A DNA stretch of 63,858 bases, filler included, from Bigelowiella natans CCMP2755 (Eukaryota; Protista; Cercozoa), in assembly GCA_000320545.1 (NCBI GenBank). It is 10 parts of 10 records of this genome, joined end to end, with 100 filler letters (N's around TTAATTAATTAA, not from the genome) between each part and the next. Parts side by side here need not be neighbours in the genome. Positions count along the whole stretch, not along the records: positions 36,913 to 52,991 come from ADNK01001619.1; 9 more parts are not named here. One strand, 5' to 3'. The position numbers were made by a program, and so were the translations under genes. Of the stretch, positions 36,913-52,991 are shown one piece after another. Position 1 is the first letter of the stretch, and each line of letters starts with the position of its first letter. The notes beneath the pieces are model-generated. The model saw only the letters and a program-made list of their open reading frames with translations, ran no database searches and was not told the DNA's origin.

Positions 36913-42351
<5,439 letters not shown>

Positions 42352-42539
42352 GTCTGATGCCTGGTCTGCGGGGAGGGGAGGCAGTTCTGAGGCGCAGATC
42401 AAATTTGAATTTGAATCTCAGCGTCCGAATTTGGACAAATGAAGAAGCCGTGAACATCGAAGCACATACCTCTCCACAGAGATAACTGTGGAACCCGATG
42501 TACCTATCAGTGGCCTTTTCGGACAGTTTTCAGGTGCAC

Positions 42540-43870
42540 AAATTAGGATGTGTACAGGGTGATACATGCTCTACACTTCAAACATCGCGGCAACAGCCTG
42601 GATGAGAGTGAATGTATTTTGTGCCGGAAACATCTTAGAATACTGGTTTGTATCAAGGAGCTCTTGAGGTCGCGCCTTTTCTCTTTTGGGATGATTCGGC
42701 GCGCATTTTTCGAATCGAGCGACAAAAGAGGGGTACCCTAGTTGGAAGCGGCTTTTCCTGTTGCGTGCAAATTGCTGTTGCGTCAGCCAGACTCCATGTC
42801 GTAGAATGGGGTTTACAGGAGATTTTGCCTGTGCAAGATTGTTGGAAGATGAATGCAGACACAATTTCATCGATGATTGCAAGCAGTTTTTTCGTGACGA
42901 CACTTGACGCAGCCAACGTCTAGTCCAGTTCTGAAACCGAGGGAGGACATCCACAAAAAATTGTCGAAAATCAACGAGACAGAAAGTGTGTTTTCGATGT
43001 CATTCATCTCCTCTCGAAGTTTCGCCATCAGAAAAAAGAGCTTCGGTGTCATCTGTCAAAATGTTCCTCTTTTTCGTCGGAAGTGAAAGTCGCAGGGGAT
43101 CTTGAGGCTGTCGATATGTAATTTTGAGAAATCTATCTCTGAAGTGTCTCAGAGAAATGGGAGAAACTTCCCACATTTTATTCCGGGAGAGCGTTCCGTA
43201 ACTGGATTTCTGGACCTGGATCACAAAATAGACCATCTGATCCAAACTTTTAGTTCTTTGAGAAGCGAATATGTCTTAAGCGACTTGAATAAACCTGGAA
43301 TATTGTGAAGAATGTACGAGGTTTCATTGACAACGACATGGAAGGAGCCCTCAGGCTGACTTCAGTATCAATCTCGTTTTAGATTCATCCAACCCTTGTT
43401 TGTGGCCTCGAGTGGTAAACTGTTGATCCAAGCATGGCAGACGAGGAAGGTACCAGATCGTTGGTAGATTTTGGTGTCTCATTTTCTTCTCTTCTCTTAC
43501 CCCTGAAGAATTTATAGAAGACATTTGACAAACTTCTCCATAGGAATTCATTACATACGATGTAGCCATAAGTTGCGGATTTATCGCATATACGAGTTAA
43601 AACCAAAATCCTCGAATAATATGGTGTTTTCGATCAATTATTATATGTAAATTATAGTTGCGAAGTTCACAGCTATGTACGTGGAGGCGTACAATTCGTG
43701 GGGGAATAGTGAGACGCTCCTGGACGCATTTGCACGTGTTGCTTTCGCTCCGCAAAAGCCCGAGATTGAAGCTGCTGAGGATGAAACAGAGGTCGCCATC
43801 CCAGTAGTCGAAGATGAAATTCAAAAGGTGTCAATTTAGATGGCCAGTATATCGCAATTTGGAATTTCAC
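42540..43870 (-). CDS. Possible small multi-exon gene of unknown function
   Basis: Microsatellite-free stretch with AG/GT-bounded open segments, e.g. 'PEGSFHVVVNETSYILHNIPGLFKSLKTYSLLKELK' and 'VQKSSYGTLSRNKMWE'. No motif recognised and the model is not resolved. Confidence 0.3.
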
Positions 43871-43920
43871 AGCCCGTAGTCTGATTGTTGTTTATGACGG
43901 GACATGGCTTGTACTGCACG

Positions 43921-44456
43921 ATGCAGGTAGCGGAAGCGACAGAGGAGTCGACAGAAAGTAAGGAAAAGAAAAGCCAGTCGAAGACTATTCAGGCCAAGAA
44001 GGCTCACATTAATGATGCTAGGTATGTGTGCCTTTGTAAGAAAAAATGTTTTGTCCGCACATGCGCACAGAAGCCAAAACACACACAAATTATTTATATT
44101 AATATCTAAAAATATGTATACTTTTTTTAAATGTGAGTTGTGTGTGTAAAGCACTGCCGTTACACAATATCCTTCTTCCCAATTCAACAAATAGTTTTTG
44201 GTCAAGCAAAAATAAAAAAACCTGTCCAATCACTCTGTCCTCATTGCTTTTCTTTACTTCAAAGCATCGTGCTGGGTGACGACGGTCCTAGCAGACATCA
44301 TGATAGTGTTGGAACGAAAACAAAGCGTAGGAGTAGCAAAAATGTCGTCAATCCACCCGGCGGGAGGTCATCAATTTCATTCGGTGAAGGCGAAAGCGTC
44401 TCCGGTTAGGAAGCTTTATAGACGAGTTTACCTTTCCTCCCCCCTAACCCCCACAC

Positions 44457-44493
<37 letters not shown>

Positions 44494-45813
44494 CCCTCCT
44501 CCCCTTCTCTCTCCTAGTCCCCCCATTCTGACCCCTTTGCGTGCATATGTATGGTGAACCCTCAAAGTGATTTTAGCTTCCCCCCCCCACGCAAACAACA
44601 CTAATCAGCTCAAAGTACCCCTCAAAGCACCCCAAAGCGCATACATCCAGGCGGGAATGCGAGCTTCAAGTTTGCTTACAATGACAAGGCTAAGCCTCAA
44701 ACCTCTGGTCGCTCTCCAGCGGGCGGAAATGCGTCGTTCAAGTTCGCATACAGCGAGGAGGAGATTGAGGAAACGAAACCGAATGGCGAGGGGCGCACGC
44801 CTGCAGGAGGGAGAACCAAAATCCAGATCGGTAATCAAATAGGAAGAAGTTAGAGGGAAAGTGCAGCCAGCTGGCCAGCCTGAAGAAAGTATAGATGTCT
44901 CTGAAAATGCGCGCCATTTTGAGAGAGTTGCATATTAATGAGAGACTACTTTACGACTAATTTGGATCTTGCGACGGAGGGGAACAGCAGCCGTGCCATG
45001 GCCAAAGAAAATGAACGATGTATTCGTAGTTTTGATGTACGAATATTTTCGGTGAGAGTTTTCCTTCGTTTGTAGGTCATGAGGAGCCGTCGAAGAGGGA
45101 GGCACCATTGTCCGGGAGGTCTCCTGCTGGAGGGAAGAGTAGTTTTAAGTTCGCTTACAATATTGACAACACCGGCGAAAAGAGTAGTGTCAAGCTCCAT
45201 CACGCACCCGGAGGAAAGACCTCCGTTGTTCTTGGTAATGCCTATTAAACGCATTACTAAATGTCTTTGTTATGTGCAGAGATTGGCGTGATGATGGTTG
45301 TCGTACCTATGATTGTTGCCCGCATGGTGTTCTTGCAATATTTCCTTCTTCTCTCGATCATCTAATTATTTGCCTAGAGGTATCCTTCTAGGTCGACGTC
45401 TACCCCCACCCCCCATCTCCCCCTTCCTCTTGCTGCTCTTCACCATTTCTTACCTCCTTTTCTTAAAGGTACGGATGGCACAGAGACGAAAAGCGCGGTT
45501 GGGAGTGAAGTATCTTCTGATGTGATGGGCGGCTTTGTCAAGGCGGTGTACGGGCATGGTTCAAAGCTGAGGAGCCTTTTCCAAGAATTCATTGGAGGCA
45601 ACACCACCAGCAAGTTTATCACCAAACCGGGATTCATCAATGGCCTTAACGTCATCGGCTTCAAGATGGGGTACGTTGCGTGACGCATGCACGATTTTCC
45701 CAAAGCTTGTCTAGCAAGTTGCGAACGAACGCGGCCATGCCTAGATTCGAGCTTATCTACCAGTGCAATACATGCCCCACACTATGGAATGGAGAGAAAG
45801 AGAGAAAGAAAAT

Positions 45814-45860
<47 letters not shown>

Positions 45861-46054
45861 TGATAAAGATGGAAAGGGGGTGGGAGGGGGGGGAGTATTT
45901 TTTTCAATGCGCTCATCCCCACACCATATCTCACATATCTGGCTCTACGATGCACACACATAGAGATGGAGATGTAGACAAGATCTTCGAGCGCTACTCC
46001 AAGAATGGGGGCATCTCGTACTCCTCGTTCGTCCGTATGCTTTCATTTCGATGA
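43921..46054 (+). CDS. Protein with six PGG motifs (Jupiter/HN1/SPIRAL1-like) and a C-terminal EF-hand-like pair
   Basis: Six exons splice in frame. Motifs: NPPGGRSSISFG, HPGGNASFKFAY, SPAGGNASFKFAY, TPAGGRTKIQIG, SPAGGKSSFKFAY, HAPGGKTSVVLG. Tail 'LRSLFQEF...ITKPGFINGLNVIGFKMG|DGDVDKIFERYSKNGGISYSSFVRML'. Confidence 0.75.
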
Positions 46055-46634
46055 GAAGTAAGAACCTTCTCTTTGTGCTGGGTGCTTCAGAAAAACACGG
46101 GCGGAGGTAGGAGTTGTGGGTGGGAATGAATTTTCATGCTCAAAACGGAAATTTTCCGGTACATGCATCAGGACGCCTTTTCAGTGAACATCGTGATGAA
46201 TGTGAGATACAAATCTATCAAAACAATCTATGGCCTGTGCTTAGACTTCCTTGGTTTCAAATTTCATGCACGAAGAACTCTGAGTAAAGTCTAATCCTAT
46301 CGTGAAAATTTGTCCGAGTCCTTGCCACCGCATGAAATTAGGCAGGAAAACTTCTGCGTGCAAGTAAGCGTGAGCTAGGCATGTGCGGCTTTCAGTGGCA
46401 TGGCAATGACACATGTAGAAATCATGTTGAACACTAAATCAAGAAATTAGAGCTTTGGCTTCGACACATGCGCGTGTCTAGCTCCACTTTATTTGCACGC
46501 GCAGTGCGCAATCATTAGCTCACGCACATGCTATGCACCGCTTTGGGTCGGGCGTCGGCTCTCCTTCCGAGCAGCCTGGGCACTCGGATGGCAATGAGTC
46601 AATCGTCTGCCCCATCAAAGCACTATAGACACAG

Positions 46635-46667
<33 letters not shown>

Positions 46668-47272
46668 CGTATGTCTATTGTAAGCCAAGGCAACGGTGTC
46701 TCGAATGCTCTAGCTTTGGTGGACACGAATGAGGCCGCCATTTTTCCGAAATCCCAGGCGAGCTAGCGTGACAGAGTGTGGCAGAACGTGATTGCATGTG
46801 TGGACCATGCTAGCATGCGAACTGCTGCGGTTCATTGATCCTAAATGCTGCGCAGTTGCACATGTGTGTCACGACGTGCAAAACTTCCACAAACAGGGCG
46901 CATGTCGACAAAGTTCTAATTGTCAACTTTGTCAACTGAGTGCTAATAATGATCATGGAAGAAGCCCACAAATGAAACCAGATTCATGTCCCATGATGAG
47001 CCAGACACATGTGTGCAATGCTAGAATGCACTGCACATGCGTCTTGCAACCTTGCCATGCGCGCAGCATTCTAAATGTTGAGATTCGTAGCATTTGTAAA
47101 TAAAATTTGTTGCATTCATTGTTCCTGGATGTCGTCACATCGCATGTGAAAGTTGAGATCTAATCTAGTATTGTCTTAGCAAAGCTTGAAAGCGTTCCTC
47201 AAAATCGTCACATCGCAGTGCATCTTGTCTTGGTAAAGCAAAATTTGTTGTATTTGTTGTTCCTTAGTGTCG

Positions 47273-50068
47273 TCATATTGCAGTATATGACAGTATCAAT
47301 CTGATCTCATCTTGTCGTAAAGTGTTTGTCAAAGCTTGAATCAATGGCTTTTCAGTCACGATTTGAACTAGTTCGTCTGCTTCTTTCCAATGTGATGACT
47401 TCCTCTGCTCCGCGTCCAGGATGTGAGTCAGATGATATGCAAGGCTCAAGTACGCAGGAACGTATTTCTTTTCAACGGCCACACGGTAGCAGATCGCAGC
47501 CTATAGTTAGAACACAAGCACAGATGGGATGTTCAGAATACCATGATGAACGACAATGTCCCCGCACCCCCTAAATGGCGAATCAAACGATTCTGTATGC
47601 CTTCGTGTGTAGTTACGACACACCTGCTCAAATTTCCCCAAGTCGTAATATTCGTCCCCGGTTCGATTCACTTTTTTCCCAGACTTGGAACGAAGCGTCG
47701 AGAACCACATGTCTCCCAGATATCTGGTGTTCCATTGCATCAAGAATGATCAGAAGATTTTCAATTGCATAACTAATTCGGCCCTGAAACTTGCAATTAT
47801 TTCCTGTGGTACTAACACCTCTGGATGTGTCGTTGGCATGTGTAAGGGTGAGAGAGAGAGAGAGAGAGAGCGACACAGAAAAAAGAGAAACAATTTGTCG
47901 TCGCACTTTCAATCTCATAGAAAGCGTTCTCACATGACGCATAAGTACTGCTGCTCTGGTGGCGGTCATGATGCTGCTGCTGCGGTTGCACAACTCACCC
48001 TGGGGGTTTCCGGTCAAGGCAGACAGAGCATGCAGGTGCCTGTATTCCATTAACAAAATCGCATCTGGTGCAAAACCAGGTCATTCCCTTGATCTTCGTG
48101 ATGGTCTGCATTCTTTCAGCCTCTTTGCATTCTGAGAAAGGCCCGATCGTTGGATTAGAGGGAGCTGGTCCCGAAACGAAAGCAGGAAGCTTGAAATTCG
48201 CCTTGGATTGAATGTTAAGTAGAATTTCATCCTCGTCTTTTACTCCAGATTCCAAGAGAGTCCTGACTCAGATGCAGCATGATCAGCGCATGTGTTCGGA
48301 TAGTCACCACTAAATCTCATGATCGACCTTTCATTGACGAGTAGCTTGGAGCGATGGGTGAGATGAATGCTTTCATTGGAGCTTTTATCGGAGATTCCAA
48401 TTTCAGAACGCACATGATTAACCAAATCTCCCACCTTTTGGATGTTGGGATTGGGAAATATGAACCAGTTAGAATCCACCCTCGATTTAGCAGTAGTAGG
48501 TGTAACTGTGCAGTTTTGCATGTACCTTGACACTCGATGGCATTTCGATGGTGCAACAATTGCCATTAAATTTAACATGAATCTGGAGAAACTTCTCCTC
48601 GTCCTCATCCTTTTCTTCATCCTACATGTACAAATAACCAATCAGACCAACAAATGCTTGGAGAAGACATTTAGTCACTACATTGTTTGCAGCCGATCTC
48701 CATTTTTTTTTTTTTTTTTTTTGTGGGAACCCTTAGTTTCTTTGATTTTTCCTGTGACAGAGATATTCATTTTGTCGCAGTTTGTTTGAGATGCATTCTT
48801 TTGTTAACATGTTCGTCGCTTTCTGTTTTCTCTGGATAACGCAGTATCATATGTTGGAAAATGCGATACATTATGCGACTTTCATTAGATGCAGAGTCAG
48901 AGCCAAAGCCAAATCCTCCACCAAATCCTCCAGTTCCTACAAATCGATGTTTCATGAGTCTGTTAGATACTTCCTTGTTTCCTCCAGACAACGGAGCATC
49001 ATTTGCACAAGAATGCGATGTATCATGCGACTACCATTAGATGGAGAGTCAGAGCCAAAGCCAAATCCTCCACCAAATCCTCCAGTTCCTACAAATCGAT
49101 GTTTCATGAGTCTGTTAGATACTTCCTTGTTCCTCCAGACAACGGAGCATCATTTATACAAGAATGCGATGTATCATGCGACTACCATCAGATGGAGAGT
49201 CAGAGCCAAAGCCAAATCCTCCAGTTCCTACAGATCGATGTTTCATGAGTCTGTTAGATATTTCCTTGTTTCCTCCAGACCTCCAGACAACGGAGCATCA
49301 TTTATTTCAGAATGTGATGTGTCATGCGACTACCATTAGATGGAGAGTCAGAGCCAAAGCCAAATCCTCCACCAAATCCTCCAGCTCCTACAGATCGATG
49401 TTTCATGAGTCTGTTAGATATTTCCTTGTTTCCTCCAGACAACGGAGCATCATTTACACAAGAATGCGATGTATCATGCGACTACCATTAGATGGAGAGT
49501 CAGAGCCAAAGCCAAATCCTCCACCAAATCCTCCAGCTCCTACAGATCGATGTTTCATGAGTCTGTTAGACATTTCCTTGTTTCCTCCAGACCTCCAGAC
49601 AACGGAGCACCATTCATACAAGAATGCGATGTATCATGCGACTACCATCAGATGGAGAGCTTAAGTCAAAGTCTTCAATTTCAAACTGCATGTTTGCTTC
49701 AGTGTTTAGTATTCAATGTTCTCCTGCAAATCAACATTTCATCATTGTGTTAGTCGCTTTCTGTTTTCTCTGAAGAGTGAGCGTGACTGGGATGCGGGCG
49801 AGCTTTCTTTCTTATAAATGGAGAGCAAAAGGTTTATCAGAATTACGTCTGGGTAGTTTGTGCTGTTGAGAACTGAGCGCCCTCCTCTATTTTTCCCCTG
49901 AAGGGTTTGGCCAGGAGATCTCGGCTCCAAAGAAATCAGAAGGATTTTGCTGCGCATCGGTTCATCCAGCTGTAGAAGAAAAGGCGCCAGACAGGCATGT
50001 CGTCTGAAAACAATTTCCTCCTTTTCATGCCGGCGACAACTGTTTTCATCTCTCTTCTCATCGTCCAT
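47273..50068 (-). CDS. Multi-exon protein: FG-rich repeats x5 - ubiquitin-like domain - RanBP2/NZF zinc finger - TPR/Sel1-like helices
   Basis: Phase-consistent GT-AG splicing from the ATG at 50068 through the zinc finger. UBL 'FLQIHVKFNGNCCTIEMPSSVK|VGDLVNHVRSEIGIS...IHLTHRSKLLVNER|TLLESGVKDEDEILL'. ZnF 'WFCTRCDFVNGIQAPACSVC'. TPR-like 'GDEYYDLGKFEQ|AAICYRVAVEKKYVPAYLSLA'. The ZnF-to-TPR junction is less certain. Confidence 0.7.
48860..49660. repeat. Tandem repeat, ~150-bp unit, about 5.3 near-identical copies
   Basis: The unit core 'catgcgactaccattagatggagagtcagagccaaagccaaatcctccaccaaatcctccagttcctacaaatcgatgtttcatgagtctgttaga' recurs. Equivalent positions are 48936, 49088, 49227, 49387 and 49539. 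Confidence 0.95.
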
Positions 50069-50239
50069 TAGAAATGCATGTCGTAGGAAACTTTGAGCTT
50101 GCGTTTGTGGTCGCAATCAACCTGTCGCTGGATAAAAATCCCCAAAAGCAAGCCTCGTAATTTCGAAATTCGAGATTAGAAATTTGAAATTCAATTCCCC
50201 CCCTCCCCCCCCCTTTCTCTCCTCTTGGCATTACGATCC

Positions 50240-52759
50240 ATGGCATCGGCATGGAGGATGGGAGGTAACACATTAATGCATCTATCGTCCTCTCACTTCC
50301 TGAAGTAATCCTTCTTTTGATGACGCAGCTACAGCCTTGGCATCCCTCATCCTCATCGCCGTCGCTTTCCGAGATCAGTTTTCATCGTCAGTTTCAACGG
50401 GGAGGGTAATGTTTTTTAAAGTAATCGCGAGCATCCCTCAAACGAACATGTCGGTGGTTTCACCTCAGAATGAATACAAATAGATCCACACGTTGAAGCA
50501 TAGGGGACTATGTTTACTCAGGATACCTCTGGTGCTTTGCTTTTCTTTGCTGTCATGTTTTGTCGATTTTGTGCAGCAGGTTTCCGGGGGTTGTGTCGGC
50601 ACTCGCTTGATTGTTAATACGAAAAGAAGTGGATTGGGAAGTCAGAAGCAGATGCCTGCGAGTTGTTCTTCTTTCTCCCGATTTGGAGTGTTAGGGGCTA
50701 CCAGGAGCACGCTAAGATTCCGAGGGGGGGGGGACGATGGCCGTGCAACTTTCATCAATTGTGTGAATGAGAGAAAAGAGGAGTTTTCTTCGTATCTAAG
50801 TGAGGCAGGAGCAAATAGGTTGTTAATAGCCCATTCGAGGAAGGGAGGGACCGAACAAAGGATCATTCTTCTCCCATTTTTTCCTATTCTTTTTGTTTTC
50901 TTCCCTTTCTTCACCACTACTGCCCGGTTGCCTTTCTATTGATCTGTTTATCCTGCCATCTCTACAGAGCATCCTTGGAAAGAATCATTGAAGAATACGC
51001 AGAATCACATGTAAAACCCTACCCATCAAGACATCCATCTTCATCTACTACTTTGATGCTAGTTGCCTTTGTAATTATTCACGCGCCACCCTCGAGGAAA
51101 AGAATGAGAGTAAACATATATATATCAAAAGAGTCATGAAAGATGAAACTGAAGGCATTAAATACGTGCACTTCGACAAAACAAGAGCCTTCTTGTTTCG
51201 TGCAATCAACCTTGCTTCCTTTCCGTGTTTCTTCGGCACGAGATGTTAGCTGTTATCTCCTTGAAGCTTGCAGTTTGCAGCACATCTCCACTCCAACTGA
51301 TCTTTTCTTCCTGTTTAGCACGATGAAGTGGCTTTCCTCCTGGAGAATATGCCGAAGAAGCATCTTCGGTCGCCATCTCCTGATCATTAGAATCTCCTTC
51401 GTAGCGTGCTTGTCTGCGCTTTCTTCTCCTGCTATCGATATGGCACGATTCAGCCGGAAAATATATAATATATTGACACATATGCTGTTTCACCTTCAGA
51501 GAAATCCCGTACGAGATTCTGGCCAGTTCCATCACCCTGTCCAAGAGGTTGCGCGAGGAAGCACCCTGGGGAGGCGATGTGCCTCTGGAAATCTACCTGA
51601 ACGATGTGCTGCCATACTCCTGGTGAGCCGTAGGAGAGAGCGGTGATAGAAGTTCAGATTTATTTTGGGGAAATACTCACGTGAGCAGCTATTAGTGATG
51701 CTGTTGCTGCATAGCCGCCATCTTGAGCACATCACGACATCTCGCGAGACGTCGGCGGGGACAACCTATAAGATGGCGGCTAGCTCTTTTTGATCGAATT
51801 CCGTCGCGAAGACCCAAATCAACTTGTTTTCGCGGGGACGATGACGGTAGCAATAGCATCATCATCATCATCCAAAAGTCCATGTACAATCAGTGTGACG
51901 GAGCCAATCGAAGACTGGCGCCCGTTTCTCCATGCAAAGTTCGCTCAAAAGGCAAGCGCGCCGAGAGAAATGGGAGGAACTCGTCAAAACCACGTTTACG
52001 CCTGTAGCGACCTGCATTCACCATCAGAGAGCCCCGACACGAAGAAGAAGAGAAAGAAAAAAGAAGAAGAAGAAGAAGAAGAAGAGAAATTGTTTCGGCA
52101 ATAGACCTTCAGTTGTTGATACGAGCATTATCTTCTAACTTTGTCAAGTAGGCGTTCGATGAGGCAGGTCATCAACAGCTCTGCTGCCAGCATCTGTGAT
52201 CATGCATTGAATTTTGCCGCATAAAAGCAGCGCGGGGGGGGGGGTGAGGCATTGATGGAACACATTGTATCGCTTCCTCCTCTCGTATTGCTGTCGCTTC
52301 CCTAAATTTAGAAAATCAATTGTGCAAATTGCAGCAGGCCAAGCTTCCACAGCTGCCTCTATAGAGAAAGCCGCGCTTTGGCTCAATGAAAACGTATTTC
52401 GAGAATTGAACGTCACTTACAAGTATGTGTGCGCACGTGTGCGGCCAGCACACAACACGCAAACACACACAAACACACACACACACGCACACTTATGAGA
52501 GGGTGAAAGTTGGGCAAGGAATACCGCTTGCTGCTGTGGGTTAGTCCCCAGCATGATGATAAAAATTGAAAGTTTAAGTAGAATTTTGTTTTGGGAGATC
52601 CGTTGCTATACCGAGGCCAAACAGCAGTCGTCGTCGTCGTCGTACGTGTGCGGGTGGTAGTGGTAGTATTAACTCTGTGGTGCTTGTGTTCAGGGCTTTT
52701 TACCCAGGGCATCATCCAGACCAGGTAGTAGTAGGTGGCGGGGTGTGCTTACGTGTAGA

Positions 52760-52806
<47 letters not shown>

Positions 52807-52991
52807 AGATTGTTTAACGTTGGCCCGTAGCCGTTTTAGAAACCCGTTTATGTCTGTGCGGTTCATTGGAAGTACTGCCGCCCAACCGACTCGTGATGTG
52901 GGTCCCCCGGTCTCGTTGTGTTCCCCGTGCGTGGCAGAGGCATCTAACGCTACGAGATGGTGCACATTCAGGGTTTTCATGGATCGCTCGG
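50240..52991 (+). CDS. Bacterial-type transglutaminase-like domain protein with bipartite presequence; 3' (catalytic) part lost at gap
   Basis: Spliced 'MASAWRMGATALASLILIAVAF...STLRFRGGG...EVAFLLENMPKKHL|EIPYEILASSITLSKRLREEAPWGGDVPLEIYLNDVLPYS|VTEPIEDWRPFLHAKF...AALWLNENVFRELNVTY'. This matches the FL..NMP / PW...VP..I(F/Y)LN.VLPY...E....WR signature of bacterial transglutaminase-like proteins. Confidence 0.7.

What the first reader, a model, noticed from the sequence alone, without database searches (positions are those of the whole stretch)
48860..49690. Tandem repeat is an amplified exon+intron cassette that writes an FG-repeat tract
Seen: on the minus strand each ~150-bp unit reads ...(t/c)tgtAG | GA ACT GGA GGA TTT GGT GGA GGA TTT GGC TTT GGC TCT GAC TCT CCA TCT AAT G | GTagtcgc.... 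This is a symmetric phase-1 exon of 54 nt (57 nt with the donor 3 nt downstream) encoding TGGFGGGFGFGSDSPSN, plus a ~98-nt intron. Unit spacings are 152, 139, 160 and 152. The only indel in the exon part is an in-frame 12-nt loss (third copy), whereas the intron part varies by non-triplets (98, 97, 106, 98 nt). Flanking exons join in the right phase (FEIEDFDLSSPSD upstream; a 20-nt exon KIKETK downstream). Inference: recent intragenic tandem duplication created new introns and a phase-separating, nucleoporin-like FG domain. Symmetric exons would also allow FG-repeat number to be tuned by exon skipping.
Basis: partly seen in the sequence, partly recalled or inferred. Interest (0 to 1): 0.8.

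Follow-up and report, generated by a model that had tools for sequence, protein, structure and literature searches.

The report
Amplified exon-intron cassette, really spliced
In the alga Bigelowiella natans, five tandem copies of a small exon with its intron sit at the start of a ubiquitin-like/zinc-finger gene and are really spliced into mRNA, adding a glycine-phenylalanine-rich stretch; this is a clean but ordinary case of exon amplification that the public gene model already contains.

Summary
A 152-bp array (5.2 copies, 88% matches) lies at 48860-49659. On the minus strand each unit is an AG...GT-bounded 54-nt segment (42 nt in copy 3) plus a 97-106-nt intron.

The window is Bigelowiella natans CCMP2755. 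JGI gene model 88764 (405 aa) already counts these segments as coding exons.

Assembled transcript contigs show the predicted junctions: start-codon exon to FG exon (L003, 100% identical to the window) and FG exon to FG exon (L001/L002, another isolate). The array is therefore not removed as one intron.

There is no 20-nt exon. The acceptor at 48752/48751 opens a 70-nt exon (48751-48682) holding a 20-A run.

Whether the FG tract is fused to the UBL / RanBP2-type zinc finger / TPR-like protein varies:
- In the other isolate it is fused (P0029).
- In the reference-strain transcript a strain-specific donor puts a stop six codons later.
- Four further contigs or models keep that intron, which also closes the FG frame.

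The B. longifila orthologue has no FG tract, so the array is lineage-specific. Nothing supports a nucleoporin role, and exon skipping could not be tested. This is a new member of a known kind, of moderate to low interest.

The parts
49646..49723 (-). Exon E0: 5' leader plus start codon (ATG at 49691), 15 codons, ends in phase 1. It is the diverged parent or edge copy of the cassette.
   Evidence: L003 positions 11-89 match at 100%. It is joined upstream to an exon ending at 49847 and downstream to an FG exon. It aligns with the units through the acceptor and the exon 3' end.
49486..49539 (-). FG exon 1, 54 nt, phase 1 to 1 (AGGFGGGFGFGSDSPSN). The preceding intron is 49540-49645 (106 nt).
   Evidence: The E0|FG junction in L003 begins GAGCTGG, a start specific to FG1/FG2.
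49334..49387 (-). FG exon 2, 54 nt, identical to FG1. The preceding intron is 49388-49485 (98 nt). The JGI model uses an alternative acceptor that starts the exon at 49432.
   Evidence: P0024 sequence.
49186..49227 (-). FG exon 3, 42 nt; it lacks one 12-nt internal repeat period. The preceding intron is 49228-49333 (106 nt).
49035..49088 (-). FG exon 4, 54 nt. The preceding intron is 49089-49185 (97 nt).
   Evidence: An FG|FG junction of this type (TCTAATG|GAACTGG) is seen in L001/L002.
48870..48936 (-). FG exon 5. The homologous donor is lost. Alternative ends: 48880 (57 nt, donor GT at 48879, phase 1) or 48870 (67 nt, donor GT at 48869, phase 2, a GT specific to the reference strain). The JGI model runs on to 48809.
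   Evidence: The 67-nt form is seen in L003. The 57-nt form is seen in L002.
48752..48869 (-). Intron between FG5 and the next exon. Its first ~73 nt are a diverged partial cassette. It is retained in several transcripts. It holds the FG-frame stop (TGA 48769-48767), which overlaps an ATG at 48770 that opens the MNISVTGKI... reading of the UBL protein.
   Evidence: Retained in L001, L004 and L005 and in the MMETSP model P0021. Homology to the unit is shown.
48682..48751 (-).
   Evidence: L003 157-227. The A-run is 20 in the window, 22 in L003, 24 in L001 and 3 in the L002/L004 haplotype.
48526..48621 (-). Acidic/UBL exon (DEEKDEDEEK..., phase 0).
   Evidence: L003 228-323 at 100%. P0024 residues 142-174 at 100%.
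48328..48434 (-). Second UBL exon.
   Evidence: Pfam ubiquitin scores 22.4 bits in P0024 and 33.8 bits in the B. longifila orthologue.
47999..48262 (-). Exon with the end of the UBL, a linker and the RanBP2-type (NZF-like) zinc finger.
   Evidence: Zn_ribbon_RanBP scores 23.7 bits in the orthologue. The weak PDB match is to the HOIL-1L NZF.
47624..47723 (-). Exon encoding YLGDMWFSTL...KFEQ.
   Evidence: L003 695-794.
47273..47500 (-). Last coding exon (TPR-like C-terminus, stop at 47273). The 3' UTR continues to at least 47076.
   Evidence: Weak TPR hits.

Best explanation
The array is a tandemly amplified exon-plus-intron cassette. It lies at the 5' end of the Bigelowiella natans gene for a ubiquitin-like / RanBP2-type zinc finger / TPR-like protein (JGI Bigna1 model 88764).

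Shown:
- Each 54-nt segment (42 nt in copy 3) is a real, spliced, phase-1 symmetric exon.
- The cassette descends from the first coding exon plus the 3' part of its upstream intron and the 5' part of its downstream intron. Each 'new' intron is therefore a chimera of two older ones.
- The diverged edge copies and near-identical inner copies fit repeated unequal exchange.

Together the exons write about 90 residues rich in Gly, Phe and Ser (14 FG dipeptides) right after the start codon.

Whether that tract is fused to the UBL protein is decided at the exit from the last copy:
- Donor 3 nt downstream of the lost one (57-nt exon), followed by a 70-nt Lys-rich exon whose A-run is divisible by 3: fused. 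This is shown in another isolate.
- The reference-strain-specific donor (67-nt exon): a stop six codons later. This is shown in the reference strain.
- Intron retention: the FG frame ends in a stop and the UBL frame restarts at an ATG inside the retained intron. This is shown in four contigs or models.

Inferred:
- The FG tract is a young, weakly constrained, disordered N-terminal extension that in some isoforms or strains is only an upstream ORF.
For: Array and coordinates.

Identity of the locus: P0024 (JGI Bigna1 88764) maps at 100% to the window exons.

Splicing:
- L003 is 100% identical to the window and fully GT-AG consistent. It joins exon -1 to E0, E0 to an FG exon, FG5 to the 70-nt exon, and that exon to the UBL exons.
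- L001 and L002 carry the FG|FG junction TCTAATG|GAACTGG.
- L002 gives one ORF running from the FG repeats through the UBL and zinc finger (P0029).

Origin:
- The E0 flank and the tail after FG5 align to the unit, with 0 of 1000 shuffles reaching the score.
- Both edges share a 25-nt block that differs from the inner copies.

Lineage specificity: the B. longifila orthologue and its transcript have no FG in any frame.

Conservation: exon copies are more alike than intron copies, with mean pairwise difference 0.030 against 0.055.
Against: - The transcript evidence is assembled contigs only. The repeat is collapsed: L003 starts as FG1/2 and ends as FG5. Copy number per mRNA and isoform abundance are therefore unknown.
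- In the reference genome as assembled (A20), no canonical path fuses the FG frame to the UBL frame. The JGI model bridges the gap with a weak CAT|GTTAAC donor that no contig uses.
- In L003 the UBL frame has no ATG before an internal Met.
- All three point differences among the FG exons are nonsynonymous, so there is no sign of purifying selection on the peptide.
- The A-run length is unreliable in both the genome and the transcript assemblies.
Confidence: 0.8

Rival explanations
1. The FG exons are spliced into the mRNA but are functionally only 5' leader. They form a long upstream ORF (about 40 to 150 codons) that ends before the UBL ORF and mainly lowers or regulates its translation. The FG peptide itself has no role.
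For: - In L003 (reference strain) the ATG-FG frame stops six codons into the next exon.
- L001, L004, L005 and the MMETSP model P0021 retain the intron after the last FG exon. There the FG frame stops and the ORF callers start the UBL protein at an ATG inside the retained intron.
- In the window the stop and that ATG overlap as ATGA at 48770-48767.
- There are no synonymous-only differences among the copies.
Against: - L002/P0029 shows an uninterrupted FG-UBL-zinc finger ORF.
- The two haplotypes of the Lys-rich exon differ by a 21-nt, in-frame A-run indel (24 against 3). That fits a coding exon read in the frame the FG exons deliver.
- All five exons keep the same open frame and symmetric phase.
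Confidence: 0.3
2. The array is a non-coding intronic tandem repeat or satellite, and the exon-like appearance is chance. The whole array is removed as one intron.
For: - Tandem repeats and microsatellites are very common in this piece.
- The indel pattern can be explained by internal micro-repeats rather than by coding constraint.
Against: Transcript contigs contain FG exons joined at the predicted sites to E0, to each other and to the downstream exon. These junction sequences do not exist in the genomic DNA.
Confidence: 0.03
3. The FG tract makes the protein a nucleoporin-like, phase-separating FG-repeat protein, with repeat number tuned by exon skipping.
For: - There are 14 FG dipeptides in about 90 residues, with Ser-rich spacers. 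FG-repeat domains are described as FG motifs separated by S/T-rich spacers (PMC8311347).
- A RanBP2-type zinc finger lies in the same protein.
- The symmetric exons would allow in-frame skipping.
Against: - There is no Nucleoporin_FG hit and no pore-anchoring domain. The only weak hit for the tract is the keratin type II head, E 0.008 and below cut-off.
- The zinc finger is closest to the ubiquitin-binding NZF of HOIL-1L, not to a nucleoporin finger, although that match is weak.
- The orthologue lacks the tract.
- The tract is short, and it is not even fused to the protein in several transcripts.
- No skipping isoform could be seen.
Confidence: 0.07

Closest known systems
JGI Bigelowiella natans CCMP2755 v1 gene model 88764 (estExt_fgenesh1_pg.C_370150; P0024, 405 aa)
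   Same: Same locus. The model already includes E0 and all five FG exons as coding sequence, followed by the UBL, zinc finger and TPR-like parts.
   Different: The model starts FG2 at an alternative acceptor (49432). It leaves FG5 through a weak donor at 48808 directly to the UBL exon, and it skips the 70-nt Lys-rich exon that every transcript contig contains. It probably does so to get round the frame problem caused by the A20 run.
Tandem exon duplication or amplification building repetitive protein regions, such as the 54-bp exon units of fibrillar collagen genes (own knowledge, not tested here)
   Same: Head-to-tail copies of a short symmetric exon with its intron. The exon length is a multiple of 3 (here also 54 nt) and encodes a glycine-rich repeat. 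The copies are spliced in series.
   Different: This array is very young and lineage-specific. It has five copies, lies directly after the start codon, and shows unstable reading-frame continuity with the rest of the gene.
Intron gain by tandem duplication of an AGGT-containing exon segment (Rogers model; own knowledge)
   Same: A tandem duplication raises the number of introns in the gene.
   Different: The duplicated segment here carries a whole pre-existing exon with its own acceptor and donor. Each added intron is the 5' part of the downstream intron fused to the 3' part of the upstream intron. No splice site is born inside an exon.
FG-repeat nucleoporins and other FG-repeat proteins (PMC8311347)
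   Same: FG dipeptides separated by short Ser-rich spacers, in a region predicted to be disordered. The Atlas model of the whole protein has mean pLDDT 0.52.
   Different: No profile match to Nucleoporin_FG and no pore-anchor domain. The composition is nearer to GGFG glycine loops (weak keratin-head hit). The tract is only about 90 residues and is absent from the orthologue.
UBL plus NZF proteins of the ubiquitin system (HOIL-1L/RBCK1, Sharpin; Rad23 UBL)
   Same: A ubiquitin-like domain is followed by a RanBP2-type/NZF zinc finger. The best, though weak, PDB matches are the Rad23 UBL and the HOIL-1L NZF.
   Different: All matches are below significance (E 0.1-0.4). There is no RBR or PH domain. 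The C-terminus is TPR-like. Membership is not established.

Membership tests
Tandem exon (exon+intron cassette) duplication | Adjacent head-to-tail copies that include both the exon and its flanking intron sequence | tested here: met
   TRF period 152, 5.2 copies. Unit alignments. The edge copies align to the unit with 0 of 1000 shuffles reaching the score.
Tandem exon (exon+intron cassette) duplication | The copies are bounded by splice sites that are used in mRNA | tested here: met
   E0|FG junction in L003. FG|FG junction in L001/L002. FG5|next-exon junctions in L002 and L003.
Tandem exon (exon+intron cassette) duplication | The copies keep the same phase and a length divisible by 3, so serial inclusion preserves the frame | tested here: met
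   Lengths 54, 54, 42, 54 and 57 nt, all phase 1 to 1, with an open frame in each.
Tandem exon (exon+intron cassette) duplication | The duplicated exons are part of the protein-coding frame of the host gene | tested here: inconclusive
   Fused ORF in L002/P0029 from another isolate. Stop after the FG tract in L003 (reference strain) and in the intron-retaining contigs. The A-run length (20, 22 or 24) decides the frame and is unreliable.
FG-repeat nucleoporin | Many FG motifs separated by hydrophilic S/T-rich spacers | tested here: inconclusive
   14 FG dipeptides in about 90 residues with SDSPSN spacers. The tract is short and very Gly-rich, and there is no Nucleoporin_FG hit at E up to 1.
FG-repeat nucleoporin | A domain that anchors the protein in the pore (such as Nsp1_C coiled coil, Nup98 autoproteolytic domain or beta-propeller) | tested here: not met
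   Pfam scan of P0024, P0029 and P0030 finds only ubiquitin, Zn_ribbon_RanBP and weak TPR.
FG-repeat nucleoporin | Localisation at the nuclear pore and binding of transport receptors | not testable with these tools
   Needs microscopy and binding assays.
Intron gain by duplication of an AGGT-containing exon segment | New donor and acceptor arise from a duplicated AGGT inside a formerly continuous exon | tested here: not met
   The unit carries the pre-existing acceptor and donor of E0 together with flanking intron sequence from both sides.
UBL + RanBP2-type zinc finger protein | Profile matches to the ubiquitin family and to Zn_ribbon_RanBP above the curated cut-offs | tested here: inconclusive
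   Ubiquitin: 22.4 bits in P0024 (cut-off 25.4) and 33.8 bits in the orthologue P0030. Zn_ribbon_RanBP: 23.7 bits in P0030 (cut-off 27). The single exons alone gave no hit.

The most novel reading that the evidence does not exclude
The locus may show a protein domain at the moment of its birth, together with a strain-polymorphic switch. An acidic first exon (EDFD-type) was copied, turned into GGFG by GAx-to-GGx changes and amplified. Two small variable sites then decide between strains and transcripts whether the new FG tract is the N-terminus of the UBL/zinc-finger protein or only an upstream ORF that gates its translation. One site is a single-base GT that creates a competing donor in the last copy. 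The other is a 3-to-24-nt A-run in the next exon, which is itself prone to slippage.
Probability: 0.3. Interest if true: 0.5.

Novelty: new member of a known kind. Interest (0 to 1): 0.35.

Why it matters
This is a compact example, backed by transcript contigs, of how unequal exchange can add exons, introns and a low-complexity protein tract in one step in a protist. B. natans has been reported to have unusual levels of alternative splicing, although that claim is disputed (PMC6142364). The example also shows how fragile such a young addition is: one donor SNP and a homopolymer length decide whether the tract is protein or leader. For annotation, it shows that the public model bridges a frame problem with an unsupported donor and omits a real 70-nt exon. 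It opens no long-standing question, because tandem exon amplification is a well-known route to repetitive domains.

Tried and rejected
- Pfam on single exons by reference gave nothing. Domains appeared only with whole database proteins.
A GG, not a GT, follows it, and the contigs show a 70-nt exon.
- I considered a model in which the last three bases of E0 and of each FG exon (ATG) act as the start codon, spliced straight to the UBL exon in phase 0. No contig shows such a junction.
- I considered a phase-1 alternative acceptor 7 nt inside the UBL exon. No contig uses it.
- The JGI donor at 48808 is in frame but is used by no contig.
- Two scans of metagenome contigs were blank (UBL exon; FG exon). 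That collection evidently lacks the MMETSP samples, so the blanks say nothing.
- Searches for relatives of the FG ORF found only the ORF itself. The searches with P0001 and P0024 added P0021 and P0022 but no further isoforms.
- An exact look-up of a genomic read-through ORF and of the antisense ORF of L003 found nothing. P0002 had no contig on record.
- The protein-atlas search gave no usable feature hit, and the structural neighbours are only generic disordered proteins.
Frames were worked out from exon lengths and from naturally contiguous transcript contigs and database proteins.
- The contig is not human.
Full report
**What is there**

Tandem Repeats Finder reports one array at 48860-49659: period 152, 5.2 copies, 88% matches. 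A 33-nt core occurs five times on the minus strand and never in 100 shuffles.

On the minus strand the units resolve as follows:

| Part | Coordinates | Length |
|---|---|---|
| FG1 | 49539-49486 | 54 nt |
| FG2 | 49387-49334 | 54 nt |
| FG3 | 49227-49186 | 42 nt |
| FG4 | 49088-49035 | 54 nt |
| FG5 | from 48936 | 57 or 67 nt |
| Introns | between the above | 106, 98, 106, 97, 98 nt |

Each exon is preceded by TGTAG. FG1-FG4 are followed by GTAGTCGC. In phase 1 each exon reads (A/T)GGFGGGFGFGSDSPSN or a near variant, giving 14 FG dipeptides in all.

Upstream, exon E0 (49723-49646) carries an ATG at 49691 and ends in phase 1.

FG5 has lost the homologous donor (GT to AA) but keeps a GT 3 nt further on.

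**Which genome and gene**

An HMMER search with the zinc-finger exon found a 98%-identical 187-aa protein and a 55%-identical orthologue. Cluster look-up named them. The locus is Bigelowiella natans, and the orthologue is from B. longifila.

JGI model Bigna1 88764 (P0024, 405 aa) maps at 100% identity to the window's exons. The window is therefore the CCMP2755 reference.

The gene encodes an acidic stretch, a ubiquitin-like domain, a RanBP2-type (NZF-like) zinc finger and a TPR-like C-terminus. Pfam scores are marginal in B. natans, and the ubiquitin match is above cut-off in the orthologue. The PDB matches to the Rad23 UBL and the HOIL-1L NZF are weak.

P0024 already contains E0 and all five FG exons. 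In that sense the FG exons are already annotated.

**Transcript evidence**

Several of the database proteins come from intron-less contigs, that is, from assembled transcripts (MMETSP samples held at JGI).

*L003 (reference strain).* L003 is 100% identical to the window and fully spliced at GT-AG sites. Its exon chain is:
- an upstream exon ending at 49847
- E0
- an FG exon
- a 70-nt exon, 48751-48682
- 48621-48526
- 48434-48328
- 48262-47999
- 47723-47624
- 47500 onward

Its FG part begins like FG1/FG2 (GAGCTGG) and ends like FG5 (TCTGCATCT). The assembler has therefore collapsed the repeat. The E0|FG1/2 junction and the FG5 exit are nevertheless real.

*L001 and L002 (another isolate).* These are about 96-97% identical to the window. 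That junction sequence does not exist in genomic DNA.

The exons are real.

**What is wrong downstream**

There is no 20-nt exon. The acceptor at 48752/48751 is real, but the exon runs 70 nt to the donor AACAAT|GTAGTG (GT at 48681). It contains an A20 run at 48722-48703.

Frame arithmetic from exon lengths gives the following:
- E0 leaves phase 1, and FG1-FG4 keep it.
- FG5 has two observed exits.
  - The 57-nt exit keeps phase 1 and reads the next exon as (R)KIKETKGSHK... It then needs an A-run divisible by 3 to reach the phase-0 UBL exon.
  - The 67-nt exit uses a GT present only in the reference strain; the other isolate has AT there. It gives phase 2 and a TAA six codons later.

The transcripts then fall into three groups:
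- L003 uses the 67-nt exit. Its ATG-FG frame ends in ...MKNQRN-stop, and its UBL frame has no ATG before an internal Met.
- L002 uses the 57-nt exit into a haplotype of the Lys-rich exon with only 3 A's. It gives one uninterrupted ORF from the FG repeats through the UBL and zinc finger (P0029).
- L001, L004, L005 and the MMETSP model P0021 retain the intron after the last FG exon. There the FG frame stops, and the ORF callers begin the UBL protein at an ATG inside the intron (48770), which reads MNISVTGKI....

In the window, the FG-frame TGA overlaps that ATG.

A-run lengths are 20 (genome), 22 (L003), 24 (L001) and 3 (L002/L004). The two haplotypes with reliable frames differ by 21 nt, which is in frame. 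That argues the Lys-rich exon is coding in the frame the FG exons deliver.

With A20 as assembled, no canonical path fuses FG to UBL in the reference. The JGI model gets round this with a weak CAT|GTTAAC donor at 48808 that no contig uses, and it omits the 70-nt exon.

**Origin**

The sequence just upstream of E0 aligns with the 3' half of the unit intron through the acceptor. The first ~73 nt after FG5 align with the 5' part of the unit intron. The two edges share a 25-nt block that differs from the inner copies. In each of the three comparisons, 0 of 1000 shuffles reach the observed score.

The 3' part of E0 aligns codon for codon with the FG exon. EDFDLSS..PSD lines up with GGFGFGS..PSN, and most differences are GAx to GGx.

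The cassette is therefore a copy of the first coding exon with pieces of both flanking introns. It was later amplified, with diverged edges and homogenised inner copies. The added introns are chimeras of older introns, not introns born inside an exon.

The B. longifila orthologue and its transcript have no FG in any frame, so the array is lineage-specific.

**Constraint**

Exon copies differ less than intron copies: 0.030 against 0.055 mean pairwise difference. However, all three exon substitutions are nonsynonymous. The 12-nt exon indel and the 8-nt intron indel are each one period of an internal micro-repeat. There is no clear sign of selection on the peptide.

**Function**

Nothing ties the tract to nuclear pores. 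There is no Nucleoporin_FG hit and no anchor domain, only a weak keratin glycine-rich-head hit. The atlas gave only generic disordered neighbours. FG-repeat domains are defined loosely, as FG motifs with S/T-rich spacers (PMC8311347). The tract fits that description in form only.

Exon skipping could not be assessed from collapsed assemblies. The level of exon skipping in B. natans is itself disputed (PMC6142364).

**Verdict**

The cassette is real, spliced and lineage-specific. The downstream model is wrong and the functional reading is unsupported.
- The most likely reading is a young, weakly constrained N-terminal low-complexity extension. Depending on donor choice, intron retention and A-run length, it is either fused to the UBL/zinc-finger protein or left as an upstream ORF.
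- It is a new member of a known kind (tandem exon amplification), already present in the public gene model.

Only natural contigs and database proteins were used. The contig is not human.

Noticed in passing
window 48703-48722 (minus strand A-run in the 70-nt exon): A 20-A homopolymer lies inside an exon that is read as poly-lysine. Its length is 20 in the genome, 22 in L003, 24 in L001 and only 3 in the L002/L004 haplotype. Coding poly(A) runs are reported to cause ribosome stalling and frameshifting (PMC7295572 abstract). The run may damp or shift translation here, and it makes the frame of the reference model uncertain.
   Followed up: partly
window 48767-48770 (minus strand): The stop of the FG frame (TGA) overlaps the ATG of the MNISVTGKI... 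reading as ATGA in the retained-intron isoform. In the other isolate the FG frame stops at a TAA whose last base lies 11 nt upstream of that ATG. The arrangement resembles stop/start coupling but is not conserved.
   Followed up: partly
L001 versus L002, both from JGI sample 3300017170 (positions about 340-420 and 220-275): Two clearly different haplotypes of the Lys-rich exon occur in one sample. One matches the reference and has A24. The other has several substitutions and only 3 A's. This could be heterozygosity, a second gene copy or a mixed culture.
   Followed up: no
L001/L002 positions 1-108: The other isolate has an internal cassette whose donor carries the same GT-to-AA change as the last copy. 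Its intron is retained in the contigs, with stops in the FG frame. Donor-dead copies are therefore not confined to the array's end in that isolate.
   Followed up: no
window 47724-47998 and 48263-48327 (minus-strand introns): The intron after the zinc-finger exon is retained in L001 and L002, and the ORF then ends right after the finger. The intron before that exon is retained in L004/L005, giving the 121-aa P0022. Intron retention is frequent along this gene.
   Followed up: partly
L004 positions 828-1738; window 47076-47502: Contig L004 carries the last-exon region twice in series: window 47502-47142, then 47492-47226, then 47258-47076. The 3' UTR also holds an internal ~90-nt repeat at about 72% identity (window 47319-47230 against 47178-47093). 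This is either an assembly artefact or another tandem duplication in that isolate.
   Followed up: no
window 49432 (minus strand, inside the intron before FG2): The JGI model starts FG2 at an upstream acceptor (GGAG|GAAAC). This adds 15 in-frame residues read from intron sequence. None of the contigs fetched shows this junction.
   Followed up: partly
window 44140-44409 and 45108-45248 (plus strand): Two plus-strand ORFs contain PPGG(R/K)SS-type motifs. From memory these recall the HN1/Jupiter family, but Pfam gave no such hit. They may be exons of a neighbouring gene.
   Followed up: partly
window 36913-52991 overall: The piece is unusually dense in di- and trinucleotide microsatellites, with 57 TRF rows in 16 kb, many of them perfect CA, AG, AT or TC runs. 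No long ORFs lie outside the gene described.
   Followed up: no
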